Shown one piece after another: positions 41,501-47,500 of a DNA stretch of 64,000 nt. The DNA comes from Perna viridis. Lineage: Eukaryota. The DNA is taken from contig CM074517.1 in the NCBI GenBank assembly GCA_037379345.1, positions 18,786,001-18,850,000 of the forward strand, given 5' to 3'. Below the pieces are notes generated by a model, which saw nothing but the letters and a program-made list of their open reading frames with translations, made no database searches and had not been told where the DNA came from. Every line of letters begins with the position of its first letter. Position 1 is the first letter of the stretch. A program made the position numbers and the translations under genes.

Positions 41501-44500
41501 ACAACAAATAATCCAATGCATACAACAACAATGCAATTAAATATTCAAGACACTACTCCATTAGCAAATGACAATTTCATGGTGTTTCCATGATATGGCA
41601 TCAGGCTGATTGAACCAAGACAATACAAAGCCTTCTGATTACAGCTACAAAGACATTTCCATAACTATTACAACACAATCAATGTTTGCTAATCATTTAT
41701 AAAGAAATGAATGACAAAAGATAAGGACATAACAATTCCATTTTCATTTTATGCTTCCACAGACAATGAACTAATTTCCGCTATTCATTTATTAAAAAAA
41801 ACTCATTAATCACAGAATGAAAAATAACTACAAATATTTTCAGTACTGATCACTTCTGATTGGACAGAAAAACATACAAATATGTATCAATGATTTATAG
41901 GCAGAGAGTTTAATACTTTTTGCCCATTTCTTCTTTTGAAAGTGAGCAATATTTTACATGTACTTTGTGACTATAATGACAGTTTAATTGCTTTTGCCAA
42001 ACTCAAGCTGATGCATTTCATGCTATGTCATTCTAAGAATACTCCCACTCAACCATTTAGGGTAAACAGGAAGTAGATAAGCACAGAATCTGGTAAGAAG
42101 TTATCATACAAAAGCAATACACTAAATATCTGAGGGTTCCCTCAAATAGAAGCTAAGAATTTTTTCTTAAGTGTATAACAGACGGACGGACAAGGTGTGA
42201 CAATATGGTCCATCAAAAGCATTTGACAAGTGACATAATATAATGCTTTTTTAAAATCTGAAATGAGAACTCAATTAAATTTATAAAACTCATTGATGAT
42301 AATATTGGCAATGTTGGTAGGTAATAAAACACAAAGACTCTATAACTAACCTGTAGTTGCTGGGGCCACATGTTCATACATTAGACTTGCATTGCAGAGA
42401 AGGCAAAATATTCTCTAGGTAAACTACTGGTATTTACTTAGTCAATATTTGCTGTTATATTACATTTTCTATATAGATACCTTTAATTAAACCAATTCTA
42501 TAATTCTAAACCAAACCAATAATTCCATAAACTTGATAAATTACTATCTGAATTCAATTAGTGTTAACTCTTGTTTCATTATTCAAGTTCATTGAGTTTT
42601 TCCCTTTATACAGATGAATTGACCATGAACCCCTACAAATACAATTCATGTTCGCTTAAATATTGCCCATTTAATTCAGATTTAGCTTGAATGAACTAAA
42701 CCAGTTATGCTGTAAGTTGCTGTTCTTTGTGACCTTTGGGTCATTAAACTGTAACTTATAAATGCATGGATTTTGAAAATTTGAACTAGAAAGCAAGCTC
42801 ATTAACCTTCATATCCGTTAATGAAAAAATAATCCCTAAATGATAAAAGATAAATTGGACTATCTTTTTTTTTAAAAGTAACAAAATTTTAACCCCTGAT
42901 AGATTATTACCTTCTGTTTGAAAGAAAATTCAAACCATTGCTATAGCATGGTCATTGACATGTTCATCTTTCTATTTCTTTATTTCCTTAGGACCATCAA
43001 TGGCTCAAGCCAAAGGTCAAACTCATTGTTACTAAATATAAAACTTACCTATTAAACATGAAGAACCTTTAAAAAAAGATGATATGCTCAAAGAATTGCT
43101 CATACAAGAAAAAGGAATTTATGTGAATTTAGCAGAATACTTCGCAATTATACTCATCACGAACTCAACACAATGTAGGAACTATCTTGTATGAAAACAA
43201 ACATTGAATACACTGTATTCTGATTCACTTACACTTCTCCTTTCTAGAATTTTACGCTTTATTTTTATCTTGTTTACTTAACCAGGAAAATCTACAATGA
43301 AAAGGGCCTATTTGTTTCCATACTGCTTAAAAAATATGCGACAGTATCATTAATGACATCATTCTTTACAAATAGATACATCAATTTTCCTTTTATACTC
43401 ATAGACACTAAATGGGAATTATAAATGCAGATCTAGTATAAAGGTTTCTTCATTTAGGAAACTAATTCTTTCTGTTTTATGAGAAAAAAAAACAGTTGAT
43501 ACTAGCATTAACTTACTTGACTAAAGATAAGTTACTGGAGTGCTCAGGGTTTAATACTATTCCAGGAAGACAGAAAGTAGCTACATACATTTGTTAAAGC
43601 TGTTTTTTTTTCTTTTTACAAATGAACAAAATAAATCAAATTTATCTAATATTTTCAAAGCACTATAACAGAGTATGGAGCTTAGAATAGATCTTCATTA
43701 TATCTACCAGACTACCTTGACAGTATCCGACAAAATAATGAGAAGTCACTTAATAAATGACCAGTTGCTTTCCATTAAAAAAATTTACTATATGGGATTT
43801 TTTTATTGAAGGTGCAGAGTTAATTCCAGACTGTGCCGCAGATATTTTATGTATGGCGCATAAAAAGTGCTGCATGTTGGCCCTATGGGTGCACAGTATT
43901 CCGAAGGTCAATCTCTAAATTTCTGAATTTTTATCAGTTCAATGTCCAGACACACTTCCATAATTTACAGCGTCAATGGCCTTGACTGTTTCTTAGTAAA
44001 CAGGAAAAACAAAAGTTAAAAATTTCTAGGCATGCGGTTAAAAACGACTTCAAGAAACCGTGGGCGGTGCCACGGGACACAGTCGATTCCCCTGATCCTG
44101 CTGATGTCACCCAATAAATATGGATACAGGCCTGCGAATCTGGTGAATTTTGAGTAAAATGGAAAATTGAATGTCCATGGGCTTGGGTAGGATGTGATCC
44201 TTATAAGAACAGAAAGATTCTAAGTGGTCCTGCAACATCAAAATGAATGACAATTTGAATCAGCAGAATGCTATTATAAATAATCAACATCAACATCTAC
44301 TAGTATCTTTTTATTCATTAATGGAGGCCTCTCACCTACATTGTACATGTAATGATGAAACAGTTAAGTGTATACAAACAACTAATTTATTGGTAGAATG
44401 TCTTCTTTTATGTAAAAATGACCCCTTTTATAAAGCCATACTGGCCTCTTTTTTTCTAAGAATGACCCCTGTTTTACTGTTAATTTTTGTACCTTCTGCA

Positions 44501-47500
44501 ATTTTCTGGAATGAACAATGAAAGTGGTATACATTTTCCTCACTATCCAGATGTATAGGACCCCAACCAGAATGGAACTCAGGTCTTAATTCAAACTTGG
44601 AATTCTGAAATCACCATCACACTGTGCAGAATAACTTGTTCCATAATCCTTAGATAGAAACATTTTTGGGCCAAATATTACTGAATTATCCTATTGGAAA
44701 GTGGTAATAACCCAATTCTGCTGAATGTCACAAGTTTAACAATGGAACAACTCACAAAGCTACAAATAATCAAGGGAATGAAAGAATGTAGAATGCTCAA
44801 TGTGGCTCTGTAGACCAGGATCCGATATCAGTTACTGTATTTGCATTCATTAAGGAGGTAGAACTAGGGTAAGGGACACAACTTTTACAAATCATTGGAA
44901 TGTTTGTATTCACCATTTTACAACAATTTCATGGAAACATCAAAGTAACTTGGATTGACTTCATTCTGTTTCAAAGAAAAGCTTGAAAGGATTTGGTGAT
45001 ATTGAATATGACACAAACATATCACTGATTTCAAGAGTTATGTCCCGTACCCTATCACCTTATGGAAACTATTGTATGTTGGTTTCTTAAGAGTACCCAC
45101 AAAACCCATGAAAATTGGTACCCCACTATTATAATGAAACAGTAAAATCACTATATACCCTCTTTTTCTTTTACTCCAGTAGCATTTATTCATTAGCCCT
45201 GTGCAGGTCCGGGTGTGAAAAGAATAGGCCTGCAGCAGCGCTAAGCTTGTCGTAAAAGGCGACTAAATAGTGCTCAGAACCCTAGCCAGGGGCTAGGGCG
45301 CTCTGCCCACTGAGCAACTGGGATGTGTGCCCCAGGTGGTGGAATGGGGTACCCCTGGCGTGTTACATGCTGGGGTTGTCAGGCTATAATACGGAAAACC
45401 TGACCACAAACCATAGTGGTGCACCGTGTTGGGAAAGATGCCACATTCCTCGCACGTTAAAGAACCCTACTGTGGTATTCTCCCAGAGTAGGAACCATAG
45501 AGCTCCGCCACAGGAGGCTAAATTGCCCAACCCTACCCACCTCTCCCTATTTCCAGTGGCAATCAAAATTTGTCGACCCCATTGTCCTTGTATCCCATCC
45601 CTTTTTCATTTCATTATCATTTCATGTTCATTTTATCATCAATTTCATGTTCATCGTCTGAATATAGCTGAAATATTGCTGCTCGGACGTTAAACCCCAA
45701 CAAACAAACAAACAAATTTATTCATTAAAACCATATTCTTAACTAGACCTACCGTTGGCTGAGCTGTATTGGTACCATTTAACAAGCCCATTCATGTTCA
45801 CACTGAACTGCCAAAACAACCCACTTTTAATACTGCTCTACTGACAGTAAGCTCCAATGAGGCAGTAAAATACAGCTCAACGGTTCAGATTATTAGGTCA
45901 TAAATCATCTTCATGGTGAAACTGTCCATTTTTATTACTTTCCTTGTGACAAAAAAGGTAAGAAGTTTTTTTTTCTCTGACAATAAAATTTTCTCAGAGG
46001 AATAAAAGTAGACCAGAATAACACAAGGTCTTACCTGTCATGACCCTCTACAAAATTCCTTAAAAATTATAAATGGCTTTGAGTTTATCTGTAAAATCGA
46101 TGTCCTATCATTGAACCAATTATCTTGTCAAATTTTTCCAATTGATCTGTTTTAATACAACAATATGGCGAGCAGGATAAGTCTAGAATGATGCATTGGA
46201 GTGATGAAAGGGAACTTTGGAAATGACCATTGATTTGTGGAAATCTAGTTGTCTCAAAGACAATTGAACCCACTGAGATACTTCAGTTCATGTAAACAAA
46301 AGTAGAAAAAGGCCATAAATAGAAATTTTCTGAGTCTATAGAGAAATAAAATAAGTTATGAATGAATGAAAAGCTTGAGTAAAAGAAATAATCTGATGAG
46401 TATTAAGCATTGCTGGATTTAGGTTATTCATAACATGTATCAAAATCAACCAATAAGCCTTTGATGTTCTCTGTAGGTTAAATTGAAGTCTAAAAACCAT
46501 AAACGATTACACCATCTCAAGAAAAACAAAACGGTATATAGAAAATAAAACAATTTCAAAACTGCACAACCACCACCTCTCAAATCCAAAAGAACCATAT
46601 TCAAGTAGTGTACATTGACTAGACCTAGAATTTCCTGAAGACAGAATTACATTCACTTACCAGAGAAAGATGACTATTAAAGGGCAGCTGAACCTGTTGA
46701 CCTTTTTAGTATTATACTTTACCCAATCCTCCTGTCAATACATCGATAAACTCTTAGCTATAATTAGACCTAAGAACCTTTTCTTGGAGCATGAAAAACA
46801 TATAATAGCAAAAAATAAAATCAATGTGTTATTGATATATCTGAATACATCCATAAACATACATAGTCTCCAAACATTTCCAAAAGTCTCATTGCTAAAA
46901 GTCCAAGCTGCAATCACAGACCTGTATCAAAACAGTAAGCAAGATTCATGATGCCAATCCTAATTTTACTGGTTTTAGCCCATATTATTATATGGATAAA
47001 AATTCAAATACATGTACATGTAACAATTCACTGATCACTAAATTTTAAAATTTATGTAGAAAATAGCAATACATCACTTAAAACTTTTTTCGGCTCTTCT
47101 AACCAAATTTTTGTTCTTCAGTCTTCAATTATTTAATTAATCTTATTAGTGTTTATTGTCATATAAGATTTTGAAGGAATGAACATTTTTATTAAATTAT
47201 TTCACTTCAAAGAATAAAACAATACCTAGATTGCAAAGGGACATTTTCCAAGTAAAAATTTAAATGCTTTTAATAATACTTGTATGCTAGATAATACATG
47301 TAATAAAATCTGTAATCAACAAAATAGATACCTGTATGAACTTAAAAGAATTGTGACGCAGAAAAATTCAAATCTTTATTTTTTTATTTAAAAGTATCCA
47401 GTAAAATAGCTTTGGCAAAATTTTTAATTAAGTCAGCAGGTATTCCAGTAAGGCAAAATTCATAAGTATCAATACTTAAAAAAGCAAAATACAGGTGCAA

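What the first reader, a model, noticed from the sequence alone, without database searches (positions are those of the whole stretch)
45196..45298. Retroposon that starts with a pseudoknotted RNA instead of a tRNA head: candidate undescribed self-processing ribozyme
Seen: the 12-bp TSD fixes the 5' end at G45196, and the structure begins at that base. An 8-bp stem (45202-09/45227-34) has a loop GGGT that can pair back with the terminal GCCC, forming a pseudoknot; the loop ends in AGAATA. Next comes a 7-bp stem (45237-43/45268-74) enclosing an AGCTT/TAAA internal loop and the hairpin GTCGT-AAAAG-GCGAC. I see no A box or B box. Established: some non-LTR elements lacking their own promoter are released from host transcripts by 5' ribozymes (HDV-like in R2 and RTE, twister in some RTEs, hammerheads in Penelope elements and retrozymes). 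This fold fits none of them: no CTGANGA/GAAA core, no twister GGTCCCAAGCCC, and only about 5 nt where HDV needs P3-L3-P1. Unverified recollection: repeats in other molluscs and arthropods start with the same AGAATAGG and GCTTGTCGTAAGAGGCGACTAA cores but different stem sequences, which would be covariation. Inference: a conserved catalytic or 5'-end-defining RNA motif used by a LINE/SINE system.
Basis: partly seen in the sequence, partly recalled or inferred. Interest (0 to 1): 0.9.

Follow-up and report, generated by a model that had tools for sequence, protein, structure and literature searches.

The report
Folded LINE-derived head of a SINE
The first 80 bases of this very abundant short retroposon are a known "LINE-promoter" head that turns out to be a conserved double-pseudoknot RNA, also found in the 3' ends of unrelated RNA viruses, so it more likely fixes and protects the RNA's 5' end than cuts itself.

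Summary
Window 45196-45715 is a 520-bp SINE flanked by a 12-bp target-site duplication. It belongs to a family with thousands of copies that nearly all start at G45196. Its head matches no tRNA, 5S or 7SL RNA and no Rfam ribozyme.

The conserved module is 45196-45275. It is a tandem double pseudoknot, not one pseudoknot plus an internal-loop hairpin. Compensating changes support helices b, c and d in more than 100 copies from many retroposon families; helix a varies little.

The head is not undescribed as sequence. It fits the "LP-SINE" head of Matetovici et al. 2016, which derives from LINE 5' UTRs and was proposed to be a promoter. I found no description of the fold.

The same module lies just after the last ORF in toti-like, tombus/noda-like and tetravirus-like RNA virus contigs, once as a tandem pair. 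That argues against obligatory self-cleavage. It favours an exonuclease-blocking, 5'-end-defining RNA (about 0.4) over a ribozyme (about 0.15). Neither is tested.

Other follow-ups of this scan reached similar readings on other copies in this genome.

The parts
45184..45195 (+). 5' target-site duplication ATTTATTCATTA
   Evidence: Exact 12-nt direct repeat with 45716-45727.
45196..45715 (+). 520-bp SINE (LP-SINE type): structured head, body, LINE-like tail ending in (AACA)n
   Evidence: Full-length copies at 90-100% identity in all 30 loci fetched. More than 2140 candidate head copies in the genome. TSD statistics.
45196..45275 (+). Conserved 80-nt RNA module (double pseudoknot): the 'LP head'
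   Evidence: Covariance model R1 matches 45196-45275 (50 bits). The same module is found in 110 hits from metagenome and own-genome loci and in RNA-virus contigs.
45198..45201 (+). Helix a, 5' strand (CCTG); pairs with 45210-45213 (CGGG) inside the loop of helix b, forming pseudoknot 1
   Evidence: Other families have CCCCG/CGGGG, CCCC/GGGG, CGCCC/GGGCG and GCCG/CGGC. Pair 6/17 of A3 is GC in 41 rows and CG in 7. This is the weakest helix, at 67% paired, partly because of a one-column register shift.
45210..45213 (+). Helix a, 3' strand
   Evidence: As for the 5' strand of helix a.
45203..45208 (+). Helix b, 5' strand (GCAGGT); pairs with 45228-45233 (GCCTGC)
   Evidence: Compensatory variants: GCGGG/CCCGC, ACGGG/CCCGT, GTGGGT/ACCCAC, TATAGTG/CACTATA, GTGATGG/CCATCAC and GTAGCAC/GTGCTAC. 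All 6 pairs change on both sides.
45221..45227 (+). Near-invariant loop segment AGAATAG, immediately 5' of the 3' strand of helix b
   Evidence: Conserved in nearly all families. The loop 5' of it tolerates insertions of about 12 to about 60 nt.
45228..45233 (+). Helix b, 3' strand
   Evidence: As for the 5' strand of helix b.
45234..45236 (+). Helix c, 5' strand (AGC); pairs with 45245-45247 (GCT), forming the stem of pseudoknot 2
   Evidence: Other families have TCCG/CGGA, CTCG/CGAG, TGTA/TGCA and CGTA/TGCG. Helix c was not part of the covariance model, yet it is 82% paired with CG/GC/UA/AU swaps.
45245..45247 (+). Helix c, 3' strand
   Evidence: As for the 5' strand of helix c.
45237..45243 (+). 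Helix d, 5' strand (AGCGCTA), lying in the loop of helix c; pairs with 45268-45274 (TAGTGCT)
   Evidence: Variants: CCTGG/CCAGG, CCAGG/CCTGG, CCTCCT/AGGAGG, CCCAT/ATGGG, TTCCCC/GGGGAA and ATCTT/AAGAT. 93% paired. Column 134/171 is UA 60, AU 23, CG 10.
45249..45263 (+). Hairpin e: GTCGT-AAAAG-GCGAC
   Evidence: Invariant in every hit, but it was the search pattern, so its conservation comes partly from how the hits were collected. Loop variants AAAAG, AAGAG and ACAAG occur. The closing U.G pair points to structure in the sense RNA strand.
45264..45267 (+). Conserved TAAA linker between hairpin e and the 3' strand of helix d
   Evidence: Nearly invariant in A1 and A3.
45268..45274 (+). Helix d, 3' strand
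   Evidence: As for the 5' strand of helix d.
45280..45298 (+). Family-specific hairpin CCCTAGCC-AGG-GGCTAGGG; part of the SINE but not of the conserved module
   Evidence: Present in own-genome copies. Absent downstream of the module in the other families.
45602..45606 (+). TTTTT run in the sense strand of the SINE body (element position 407)
   Evidence: 102 of 132 copies have a T run of 4 or more here. Such a run is a Pol III terminator (established knowledge), which argues against Pol III transcription of the whole element.
45661..45666 (+). AATATA hexamer about 35 nt before the (AACA)n tail
   Evidence: PMC4758252 reports the same variant polyadenylation hexamer upstream of the tail repeats of Haliotis/Ostrea LP-SINEs.
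45716..45727 (+). 3' target-site duplication

Best explanation
Shown:
- 45196-45715 is a young, very abundant, TSD-flanked SINE.
- Its first 80 nt (45196-45275) are a mobile RNA module of the kind described as the LINE-derived 'LP' head.
- In the sense RNA the module folds into two tandem H-type pseudoknots. The order is a, b, a', an A-rich loop ending in AGAAUAG, b', c, d, c', U, hairpin e, UAAA, d'.
- Helix a starts 1-2 nt from the RNA's 5' end, and helix b runs straight into helix c.
- The same fold lies at the 5' terminus of several unrelated retroposon families. It also lies just downstream of the last ORF in RNA-virus contigs of several unrelated kinds.

Inferred mechanism:
- The element has no Pol III promoter of its own. 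It is transcribed by Pol II, either from an internal LINE-type promoter or as part of host read-through transcripts.
- The compact pseudoknot block acts like a viral exoribonuclease-resistant RNA. A 5'-to-3' exonuclease (Xrn1/Xrn2) trims upstream sequence and stalls at the base of helix a.
- This leaves a stable RNA whose 5' end is G45196, and the partner LINE copies that RNA to its end.
- In the viruses the same block would yield nuclease-resistant 3' UTR fragments.
For: - Uniform 5' end. The TSD abuts nt 1 in 35 of 50 copies. In families A, B, C, D, E and G the flanks diverge directly upstream of helix a.
- Fold supported by covariation. In A3, 84% of cells are paired, against 34-44% with partners slid. 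The covariation score is 0.248, against 0.127 +/- 0.006 in shuffles (0 of 500 reach it) and 0.02-0.06 slid. Helix c, which was not in the model, is 82% paired.
- Virus-only set: 95.8% paired, and 11 of 16 pairs change on both sides.
- The invariant U.G pair in hairpin e fits structure in the sense RNA.
- Viral location. The module lies on the coding strand after the last ORF, 65-120 nt from the contig end. It occurs in L216 (RdRP_4), L222 (RdRP_3), L218 (RdRP_3 plus nodavirus capsid), L213/L221 (tetravirus-type Peptidase_A21 capsid) and L211 (tombus-type coat; two tandem copies). From established knowledge, viral xrRNAs sit at the start of 3' UTRs, often in tandem, and use pseudoknots that sequester the 5' end (see PMC12397905 abstract).
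- Evidence against Pol III: no A or B box or tRNA, and a T5 run at element position 407 in most copies.
- In family D the module sits upstream of a tRNA-derived part that has A and B boxes. A Pol III start there would not include the module.
- The module is carried by different LINE clades and by SINEs (PMC4758252). That points to a function independent of any particular reverse transcriptase.
Against: - No nuclease-resistance assay exists.
- The module matches no Rfam xrRNA family.
- A ring around the 5' end, the defining feature of xrRNAs, cannot be inferred from secondary structure.
- Helix a, which matters most for this model, shows the least covariation.
- Hairpin e is sequence-invariant, which suggests a specific protein or tertiary partner that this model does not explain.
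- The RNA-level data held here are assembled contigs only, so they cannot show 5' ends.
- I could not find a LINE with this head in the window's own genome.
Confidence: 0.4

Rival explanations
1. Self-cleaving ribozyme of a new class. The double pseudoknot cleaves the phosphodiester just 5' of G45196 and so releases the retroposon from read-through transcripts. HDV-like ribozymes do this in R2, RTE and L1Tc, and twister variants do it in Perere-3.
For: - The module lies at the exact 5' terminus in many families, with the terminal nucleotides inside a pseudoknot.
- It has many conserved unpaired nucleotides: AGAAUAG, UAAA and the AARAG loop.
- It is swapped between LINE clades and SINEs, as known 5' ribozymes are (PMC4758252; PMC5786205; PMC8501958).
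- The element has no promoter of the Pol III kind.
Against: - The module matches no known class. There is no Rfam hit in eight families. There is no P3/L3 and no invariant C as in HDV, no CUGANGA/GAAA core, and its topology differs from twister.
- It sits on the coding strand in the 3' untranslated ends of linear RNA virus genomes, once in tandem. Efficient self-cleavage there would sever the genome's 3' end.
- Virus contigs, and contigs from runs guessed to be RNA, run uncut through the module's 5' edge.
Confidence: 0.15
2. Host-factor or translation element. The fold binds a host protein such as a translation initiation factor (as viral 3' cap-independent translation enhancers do) or another RNP component. 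In this reading the fold recruits ribosomes or factors to uncapped LINE and viral RNAs, and SINEs keep it so that they stay close to nascent LINE protein.
For: - The module occurs in LINE 5' UTRs (PMC4758252) and in viral 3' UTRs, the two places where cap-independent translation elements are known (established knowledge for Tombusviridae).
- Hairpin e is invariant in sequence, which suggests sequence-specific recognition.
Against: - SINEs are not translated.
- This reading does not explain why the retroposon's 5' end coincides with the first nucleotide of the fold in every family.
- The viruses carrying the module use different translation strategies.
Confidence: 0.2
3. Internal Pol II promoter acting as DNA, as proposed for LP-SINEs, with the RNA fold incidental or secondary.
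For: - The authors who described LP-SINEs proposed it.
- Insect I-type and jockey-type LINEs have internal promoters in their first about 100 bp (established knowledge).
- An AATATA hexamer lies before the tail.
- 5' ends are precise.
Against: - Compensatory base changes preserve pairing in helices b, c and d, including flips such as UA/AU and CG/GC. A duplex-DNA promoter does not require this.
- The module also sits in the 3' UTRs of RNA viruses, which have no DNA stage.
- No systematic extra G, the signature of reverse-transcribed caps, is seen at the 5' junction.
- A promoter role could still coexist with an RNA role, as in L1Tc Pr77.
Confidence: 0.1
4. Substrate mimic for a host endonuclease. 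Helices a and b stack to about 11-12 bp and imitate a tRNA acceptor/T-arm, so that RNase P or a similar enzyme cuts just 5' of helix a.
For: - Together a and b are 10-13 bp in all families, followed by a single-stranded 3' continuation.
- The 5' end lies 0-1 nt before helix a.
- Pseudoknotted tRNA-like structures are known RNase P substrates (established knowledge for plant-virus tRNA-like structures).
Against: - No tRNA model matches.
- The second pseudoknot and hairpin e have no role in this model.
- In viral 3' UTRs such a cut would sever the genome, as for the ribozyme reading.
Confidence: 0.06

Closest known systems
LP-SINEs ('LINE promoter' SINEs) of gastropods and bivalves; pectinoid MESC SINEs with a LINE-derived 5' end (Matetovici et al. 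2016, PMC4758252)
   Same: Both are TSD-flanked short retroposons with 3' tandem repeats and no small-RNA head. Their first about 70 bp are shared with the start of LINE 5' UTRs of different clades (Nimb, RTE). They are reported in scallops, oysters, abalone, Littorina and a fruit fly. The scallop element in the paper is 520 bp long, as here. An AATATA hexamer lies before the tail. The head can sit upstream of, or replace, a tRNA-derived head, as I saw in family D.
   Different: The paper treats the head as sequence and as a putative promoter. It describes no RNA fold, covariation or viral copies. I could not align this head to the Repbase LINEs it names. The scallop MESC SINE is said to have an 88-bp CT-rich stretch after the head, which this copy lacks, so this may be another LP-SINE family.
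HDV-like ribozymes at the 5' ends of R2, RTE, LOA and L1Tc (Pr77) retrotransposons
   Same: Both are about 70-80 nt modules at the extreme 5' end. Both are pseudoknotted, with the first nucleotides inside the fold. Both are shared between LINE clades and their non-autonomous derivatives. In L1Tc the module is combined with promoter activity.
   Different: This module has no P3/L3, no P1.1, no catalytic C in a J4/2-like strand and no Rfam match. Its two pseudoknots are in tandem rather than nested.
Twister variants at the 5' end of Perere-3 (Schistosoma mansoni; PMC8501958)
   Same: Both sit at the start of a non-LTR element with the TSD directly adjacent. Both contain a hairpin whose loop pairs downstream.
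   Different: The order of helices differs. The twister core is absent, and the twister models give no hit.
Viral exoribonuclease-resistant RNAs (flavivirus classes 1 and 2; plant-virus class 3)
   Same: Both are compact pseudoknotted folds that involve the element's own 5' end. Both lie at the start of viral 3' UTRs and are sometimes in tandem. Both define the 5' end of a stable RNA.
   Different: There is no sequence or covariance-model similarity. The architecture differs: two H-type pseudoknots plus a hairpin, rather than a three-way junction or a single stem-loop. Resistance is untested. No xrRNA is known in cellular retroposons (own knowledge).
s2m, a mobile stem-loop of viral 3' UTRs (own knowledge, not checked here)
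   Same: Both are small, highly conserved RNA elements that hop between unrelated RNA virus families.
   Different: The sequence and fold differ. s2m is not known as a retroposon 5' end.

Membership tests
LP-SINE (Matetovici et al. 2016) | Short non-autonomous retroposon with variable TSDs and a 3' tandem-repeat tail | tested here: met
   12-bp TSD and (AACA)n tail. 50 of 75 copies have a TSD of 9 bp or more.
LP-SINE (Matetovici et al. 2016) | Head homologous to the first about 68-70 bp of LINE 5' UTRs (Nimb-17_LMi, I-3_DR, RTE-9_CPB) | not testable with these tools
   The Repbase sequences and the paper's figures are not held. Indirect support: the same module precedes, by 237 nt, an open frame of more than 281 aa on L115. 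Atlas neighbours of that frame include PRE_C2HC/DUF4780 clusters at score 0.88, which is a lead only.
LP-SINE (Matetovici et al. 2016) | Head not derived from tRNA, 5S or 7SL RNA | tested here: met
   ARAGORN finds none. Rfam finds nothing at E<=10.
HDV-like ribozyme | Nested double pseudoknot with P1, P1.1, P2, P3/L3 and P4, and a catalytic C in J4/2 | tested here: not met
   Only 1-2 nt lie between the 5' strand of b and a', where P3/L3 should be. The strand before b' is AGAAUAG, with no conserved C. No Rfam HDV-type hit.
Hammerhead ribozyme | CUGANGA and GAAA core around three stems | tested here: not met
   The core is absent from 45196-45298. No Rfam hit.
Twister, twister-sister, pistol and hatchet ribozymes | Match to the family's covariance model | tested here: not met
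   No hit at E<=10 in the window or at E<=5 in seven other families. For twister, the helix order a b a' b' c d c' e e' d' also differs from its published topology.
tRNA-derived (Pol III) SINE | A and B boxes in the head, and no internal Pol III terminator | tested here: not met
   No tRNA-like hit. A T5 run at element position 407 is kept as T4 or longer in 102 of 132 copies.
Exoribonuclease-resistant RNA (xrRNA) | Pseudoknotted fold that involves its own 5' end | tested here: met
   Helix a pairs nt 3-6 with the loop of helix b. Covariation in helix a is limited.
Exoribonuclease-resistant RNA (xrRNA) | Lies in viral 3' UTRs or intergenic regions, often in tandem | tested here: met
   Five RNA-virus-like contig groups carry it after the last ORF, and L211 has two copies.
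Exoribonuclease-resistant RNA (xrRNA) | Stops Xrn1 in vitro; ring topology around the 5' end | not testable with these tools
   This needs an enzyme assay and a 3D structure.
Exoribonuclease-resistant RNA (xrRNA) | Match to a described xrRNA family model | tested here: not met
   No Rfam hit.

The most novel reading that the evidence does not exclude
The module is a new class of 5'-end-defining RNA, shared horizontally between LINE/SINE retroposons of several animal phyla and unrelated invertebrate RNA viruses. It would be either a new exoribonuclease-resistant fold or a new self-cleaving ribozyme. As an xrRNA it would be the first found as a working part of cellular mobile elements. It would also explain how promoter-less retroposons obtain exact 5' ends from read-through transcripts.
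Probability: 0.5. Interest if true: 0.85.

Novelty: new variant of a known kind. Interest (0 to 1): 0.68.

Why it matters
How SINEs and LINEs without a Pol III head obtain a precise 5' end is only partly understood. The known answers are internal promoters and 5' ribozymes. This head was described in 2016 as a LINE-derived sequence of unknown function. Here it proves to be an about 80-nt double-pseudoknot RNA kept by compensatory changes across many retroposon families, and also present in the 3' ends of unrelated RNA viruses.

That sharing points to a self-contained function directed at the host cell, such as nuclease blocking, cleavage or factor binding. Simple assays can test it. A positive result would add a new RNA class and link retroposon biology to viral strategies for making non-coding RNA.

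Tried and rejected
- **Small-RNA origin of the head.** ARAGORN and Rfam (tRNA, 5S, 7SL, snRNA, Y, vault) gave nothing.
- **Known ribozyme classes.** Rfam gave nothing in the window or in seven other families. Threading by hand onto HDV and twister topologies failed.
- **A LINE with this head in the window's own genome.** Three pattern searches found only copies of this one SINE family.
- **LINE ORFs downstream of the module in metagenome contigs.**
  - Only L115 has a convincing adjacent open frame. Pfam gives nothing above its cut-off for it.
  - L113 has an RT-tail-like piece 3.3 kb downstream, but no intact ORFs between.
- **RNA evidence for 5' ends.**
  - All runs offered are assembled contigs whose kind is only guessed.
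  - Laying four of them shows the SINE at very high word depth. Contigs run on upstream of 45195-97 into diverse flanks, and one contig bridges this locus's junction.
  - Contigs cannot show RNA starts, so there is no verdict on cleavage or stalling.
- **Extra G at the 5' junction as a cap signature.** It is not seen; the extra nucleotides are mixed. This is weak evidence either way.
- **Literature search for the motif strings.** Neither the DNA nor the RNA spelling was found in any paper. No follow-up of 'LP-SINE' or 'Nimb-17_LMi' was found.
- **Antisense tRNA-like look of 45268-45325.** Covariance models do not support it.
- **Automatic helix parse.** It mis-assigned some families (E, L055, D), so I relied on the alignments instead.
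Full report
**1. What is in the window**

- The sequence 45184-45195 (ATTTATTCATTA) recurs exactly at 45716-45727.
- Between the two copies lies a 520-bp element that ends in (AACA)n.
- A search of the window's own 723-Mb genome with 45196-45298 gave 2140 candidates, and the 40 scored were 98-100% identical.
- BLAST of the whole element against the 30 loci fetched shows many full-length copies per locus at 82-100% identity, nearly all starting at query position 1 or 2.
- On 90 own-genome loci, 94 of 160 copies that reach position 400 start at position 1-2.
- Of 75 distinct near-full copies, 50 have a TSD of 9 bp or more. The TSD abuts nt 1 in 35, includes nt 1 in 5, and leaves 1-3 mixed extra nucleotides in 10.
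- The element is therefore a young, highly successful SINE with a sharply defined 5' end at G45196.

**2. What the head is not**

- ARAGORN finds no tRNA on either strand.
- Rfam 15 at E<=10 finds no tRNA, 5S, 7SL, snRNA or ribozyme family in 44000-47000. It finds none when only 45190-45350 is given, which relaxes the filters.
- The SINE body carries TTTTT at element position 407. This is kept as a run of four or more T in 102 of 132 copies. Such a run terminates Pol III about 110 nt before the tail.

**3. It has been described as sequence**

Matetovici et al. 2016 (PMC4758252) report 'LP-SINEs'.
- These are TSD-flanked short retroposons of scallops, oysters, abalone and Littorina, plus one fruit fly.
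- Their first about 68-70 bp are homologous to the first bases of the 5' UTRs of LINEs from different clades: Nimb-17_LMi of a locust, I-3_DR of zebrafish and RTE-9_CPB of a turtle.
- The scallop element they describe is 520 bp long.
- They propose that the fragment is a promoter, possibly for Pol II. They mention L1Tc Pr77 (promoter plus HDV-like ribozyme) as an analogy and ask for experiments.
- They note AATATA as a variant polyadenylation hexamer before the tail. This copy has AATATA at 45661-66.

I could not align the head to their sequences, because the figures and Repbase entries are not held. Membership therefore rests on architecture. Their scallop MESC SINE has a CT-rich 88 bp after the head, which this copy lacks, so this may be a different LP-SINE family. 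No later paper in the library takes up these names, and none contains the motif strings.

**4. The module is widespread and its stems covary**

- One scan of metagenome contigs with the 17-nt core of the hairpin found at least 120 contigs.
- Read in register, they fall into several families with the same plan but different stem sequences.
- In families A, B, C, D, E and G, the flanks diverge directly upstream of the first helix.
- A covariance model of three nested helices (R1) recovered 110 instances, including the window's copy at 45196-45275.

The plan is: N, a, U, b, 1-2 nt, a', a variable loop ending in AGAAUAG, b', c, about 3 nt, d, 1 nt, c', U, hairpin e (GUCGU-AARAG-GCGAC), UAAA, d'. 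This makes two H-type pseudoknots in tandem, with b' running straight into c.

In window coordinates:
- a: 45198-201 with 45210-13
- b: 45203-08 with 45228-33
- c: 45234-36 with 45245-47
- d: 45237-43 with 45268-74
- e: 45249-53 with 45259-63

The loop before AGAAUAG tolerates insertions of about 12 nt (family C) and about 60 nt (family E).

**5. Counts on the 110-row alignment**

| Measure | Structure | Partners slid 1-3 columns | Shuffles |
|---|---|---|---|
| Cells paired | 84.0% | 34-44% | 75.6% |
| Cells changed on both sides | 218 | 53-85 | 82 +/- 12 |
| Covariation score | 0.248 | 0.02-0.06 | 0.127 (0 of 500 reach it) |

- Helix c was not in the model, so the alignment could not lean towards it. 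It is 82% paired and shows UA/AU/CG and CG/GC/UA swaps.
- Helix d is 93% paired (UA 60, AU 23, CG 10 at one pair).
- Helix b shows CG 43, UA 17, AU 7 at one pair.
- Within the window's own genome, subfamilies carry TGCAGG/CCTGCA, TGCGGG/CCCGCA and TACGGG/CCCGTA.

Caveats:
- Many rows are decayed genomic copies, and CpG decay can mimic some changes.
- Helix a varies little and is only 67% paired, partly because of a one-column register shift in some families.
- Hairpin e is invariant because it was the search pattern.
- The closing U.G pair of e fits structure in the sense RNA.

**6. Context in other retroposons**

- In family D the module is followed at once by a tRNA-derived part with recognisable A and B boxes. 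This is the arrangement reported for scallop MESC SINEs. A Pol III start there would lie downstream of the module, yet the copies begin at the module.
- On L115 the module is followed after 237 nt by an open frame of more than 281 aa that runs to the contig end. Pfam gives nothing above its cut-off. Atlas neighbours are arthropod proteins and include PRE_C2HC/DUF4780 clusters at score 0.88. This is a lead that the frame is a LINE ORF1, no more.
- In the window's own genome, all pattern hits were this one SINE family.

**7. The module is also in RNA viruses**

A note from another follow-up of this scan said so, and I tested it.
- The same 17-mer occurs in 13 IMG/VR contigs.
- Model R1 finds the whole module in seven of the 13 contigs.
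- Six of them are RNA-virus-like by Pfam:
  - L216: two overlapping ORFs, the second with RdRP_4
  - L222: RdRP_3
  - L218: RdRP_3 plus a nodavirus-type capsid
  - L213 and L221: one sequence, with a tetravirus-type Peptidase_A21 capsid
  - L211: a tombusvirus-type coat S domain
- In all of these the module is on the coding strand, just after the last ORF, 65-120 nt from the contig's 3' end.
- L211 has a second copy directly downstream of the first.
- Their helix b sequences are unlike the retroposon ones: TATAGTG/CACTATA, GTGATGG/CCATCAC and GTAGCAC/GTGCTAC.
- In this set 95.8% of cells pair and 11 of 16 pairs change on both sides.
- A seventh copy lies in a 212-kb DNA-virus record (L215), upstream of a 1056-aa ORF.
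- The remaining six contigs hold only the hairpin and look like chance matches.

**8. What it most likely does**

- The covariation and the viral copies show that the module works as RNA. A purely DNA-level promoter cannot be the whole story, although a promoter role may coexist.
- The module travels with different LINE clades, with SINEs and with viruses, so its function should not depend on a particular reverse transcriptase.
- In every retroposon family the element starts 0-1 nt before helix a, which points to definition of the 5' end.
- A self-cleaving ribozyme would do that. But the module matches no known class, and it sits uncut in the 3' untranslated ends of linear RNA virus genomes, once in tandem. 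There, efficient cleavage would cut off the 3' end.
- Viral exoribonuclease-resistant RNAs have this location, this tendency to duplicate and this habit of burying their own 5' end in a pseudoknot (established knowledge; abstract of PMC12397905).
- I therefore rate an xrRNA-like block that stops 5'-to-3' trimming at G45196 as the single most likely mechanism, at about 0.4.
- The others are a new ribozyme at about 0.15, a factor-binding or translation element at about 0.2, promoter only at about 0.1 and a host-endonuclease mimic at about 0.06.
- None of these was tested. The runs available are assembled contigs whose RNA status is only guessed. They show the SINE at high depth, with contigs running on into varied upstream flanks, and that cannot decide the matter.

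**9. Verdict**

- The ribozyme reading is possible but is no longer the favourite.
- Four other follow-ups of this scan, on other copies of the same family in this genome, came to compatible readings. My scores rest on the tests above.

Noticed in passing
window 44977-45042: A hairpin about 150 nt upstream of the SINE gives a weak match to the mir-2 precursor family on both strands (23.9 bits, E=0.18, gathering score 45.5). The would-be mature arm differs from the miR-2 seed. It is probably a chance palindrome.
   Followed up: no
window 45268-45325, minus strand: Read in reverse complement, this stretch looks by eye like a tRNA D-arm/A box (GCTCAGTGGGCAGAGC) followed by a B-box-like GGTTCTGAGC. 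ARAGORN and Rfam do not support a tRNA here. It could be a relic of an inverted tRNA-SINE head, or chance.
   Followed up: partly
window 45449-45461 and 45682-45694: Two near-identical boxes, CTCGCACGTTAAA and CTCGGACGTTAAA, lie in the SINE body and just before the tail (family D4). From memory only, ACGUUAAAC is also the centre of the plant-virus 'coremin' Xrn1-stalling motif. This was not checked.
   Followed up: no
L064:1371-1516: Two copies of the module lie head to tail in one metagenome contig. The second starts where the first ends. L211 (virus-like) likewise has two copies in tandem.
   Followed up: partly
L215:1077-1148: A full copy of the module sits in a record of a 212,482-bp DNA virus, about 120 nt upstream of a 1056-aa ORF with a NAGPA domain. 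From memory, the record length matches invertebrate iridescent virus 6; this was not checked. It is unknown whether the module is a 5' or 3' UTR element there, or a retroposon fragment.
   Followed up: partly
L085, L087, L102, L121, L146 (family F): A repeat family keeps only the 3' two thirds of the module, from AGAATAG on. This part is embedded in a longer conserved element without helices a and b. Either the second pseudoknot can work alone, or this is a relic.
   Followed up: no
L209 and L210 (own genome, C2:49.26 and 49.46 Mb): In these loci the head is intact up to about position 73 and then continues into unrelated sequence shared by both loci. This may be another element that uses the same head.
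   Followed up: no
L055:1714-1872: A long perfect-looking hairpin matches several unrelated miRNA precursor models on both strands, all below their gathering scores. It is probably an inverted repeat or MITE in that contig.
   Followed up: no
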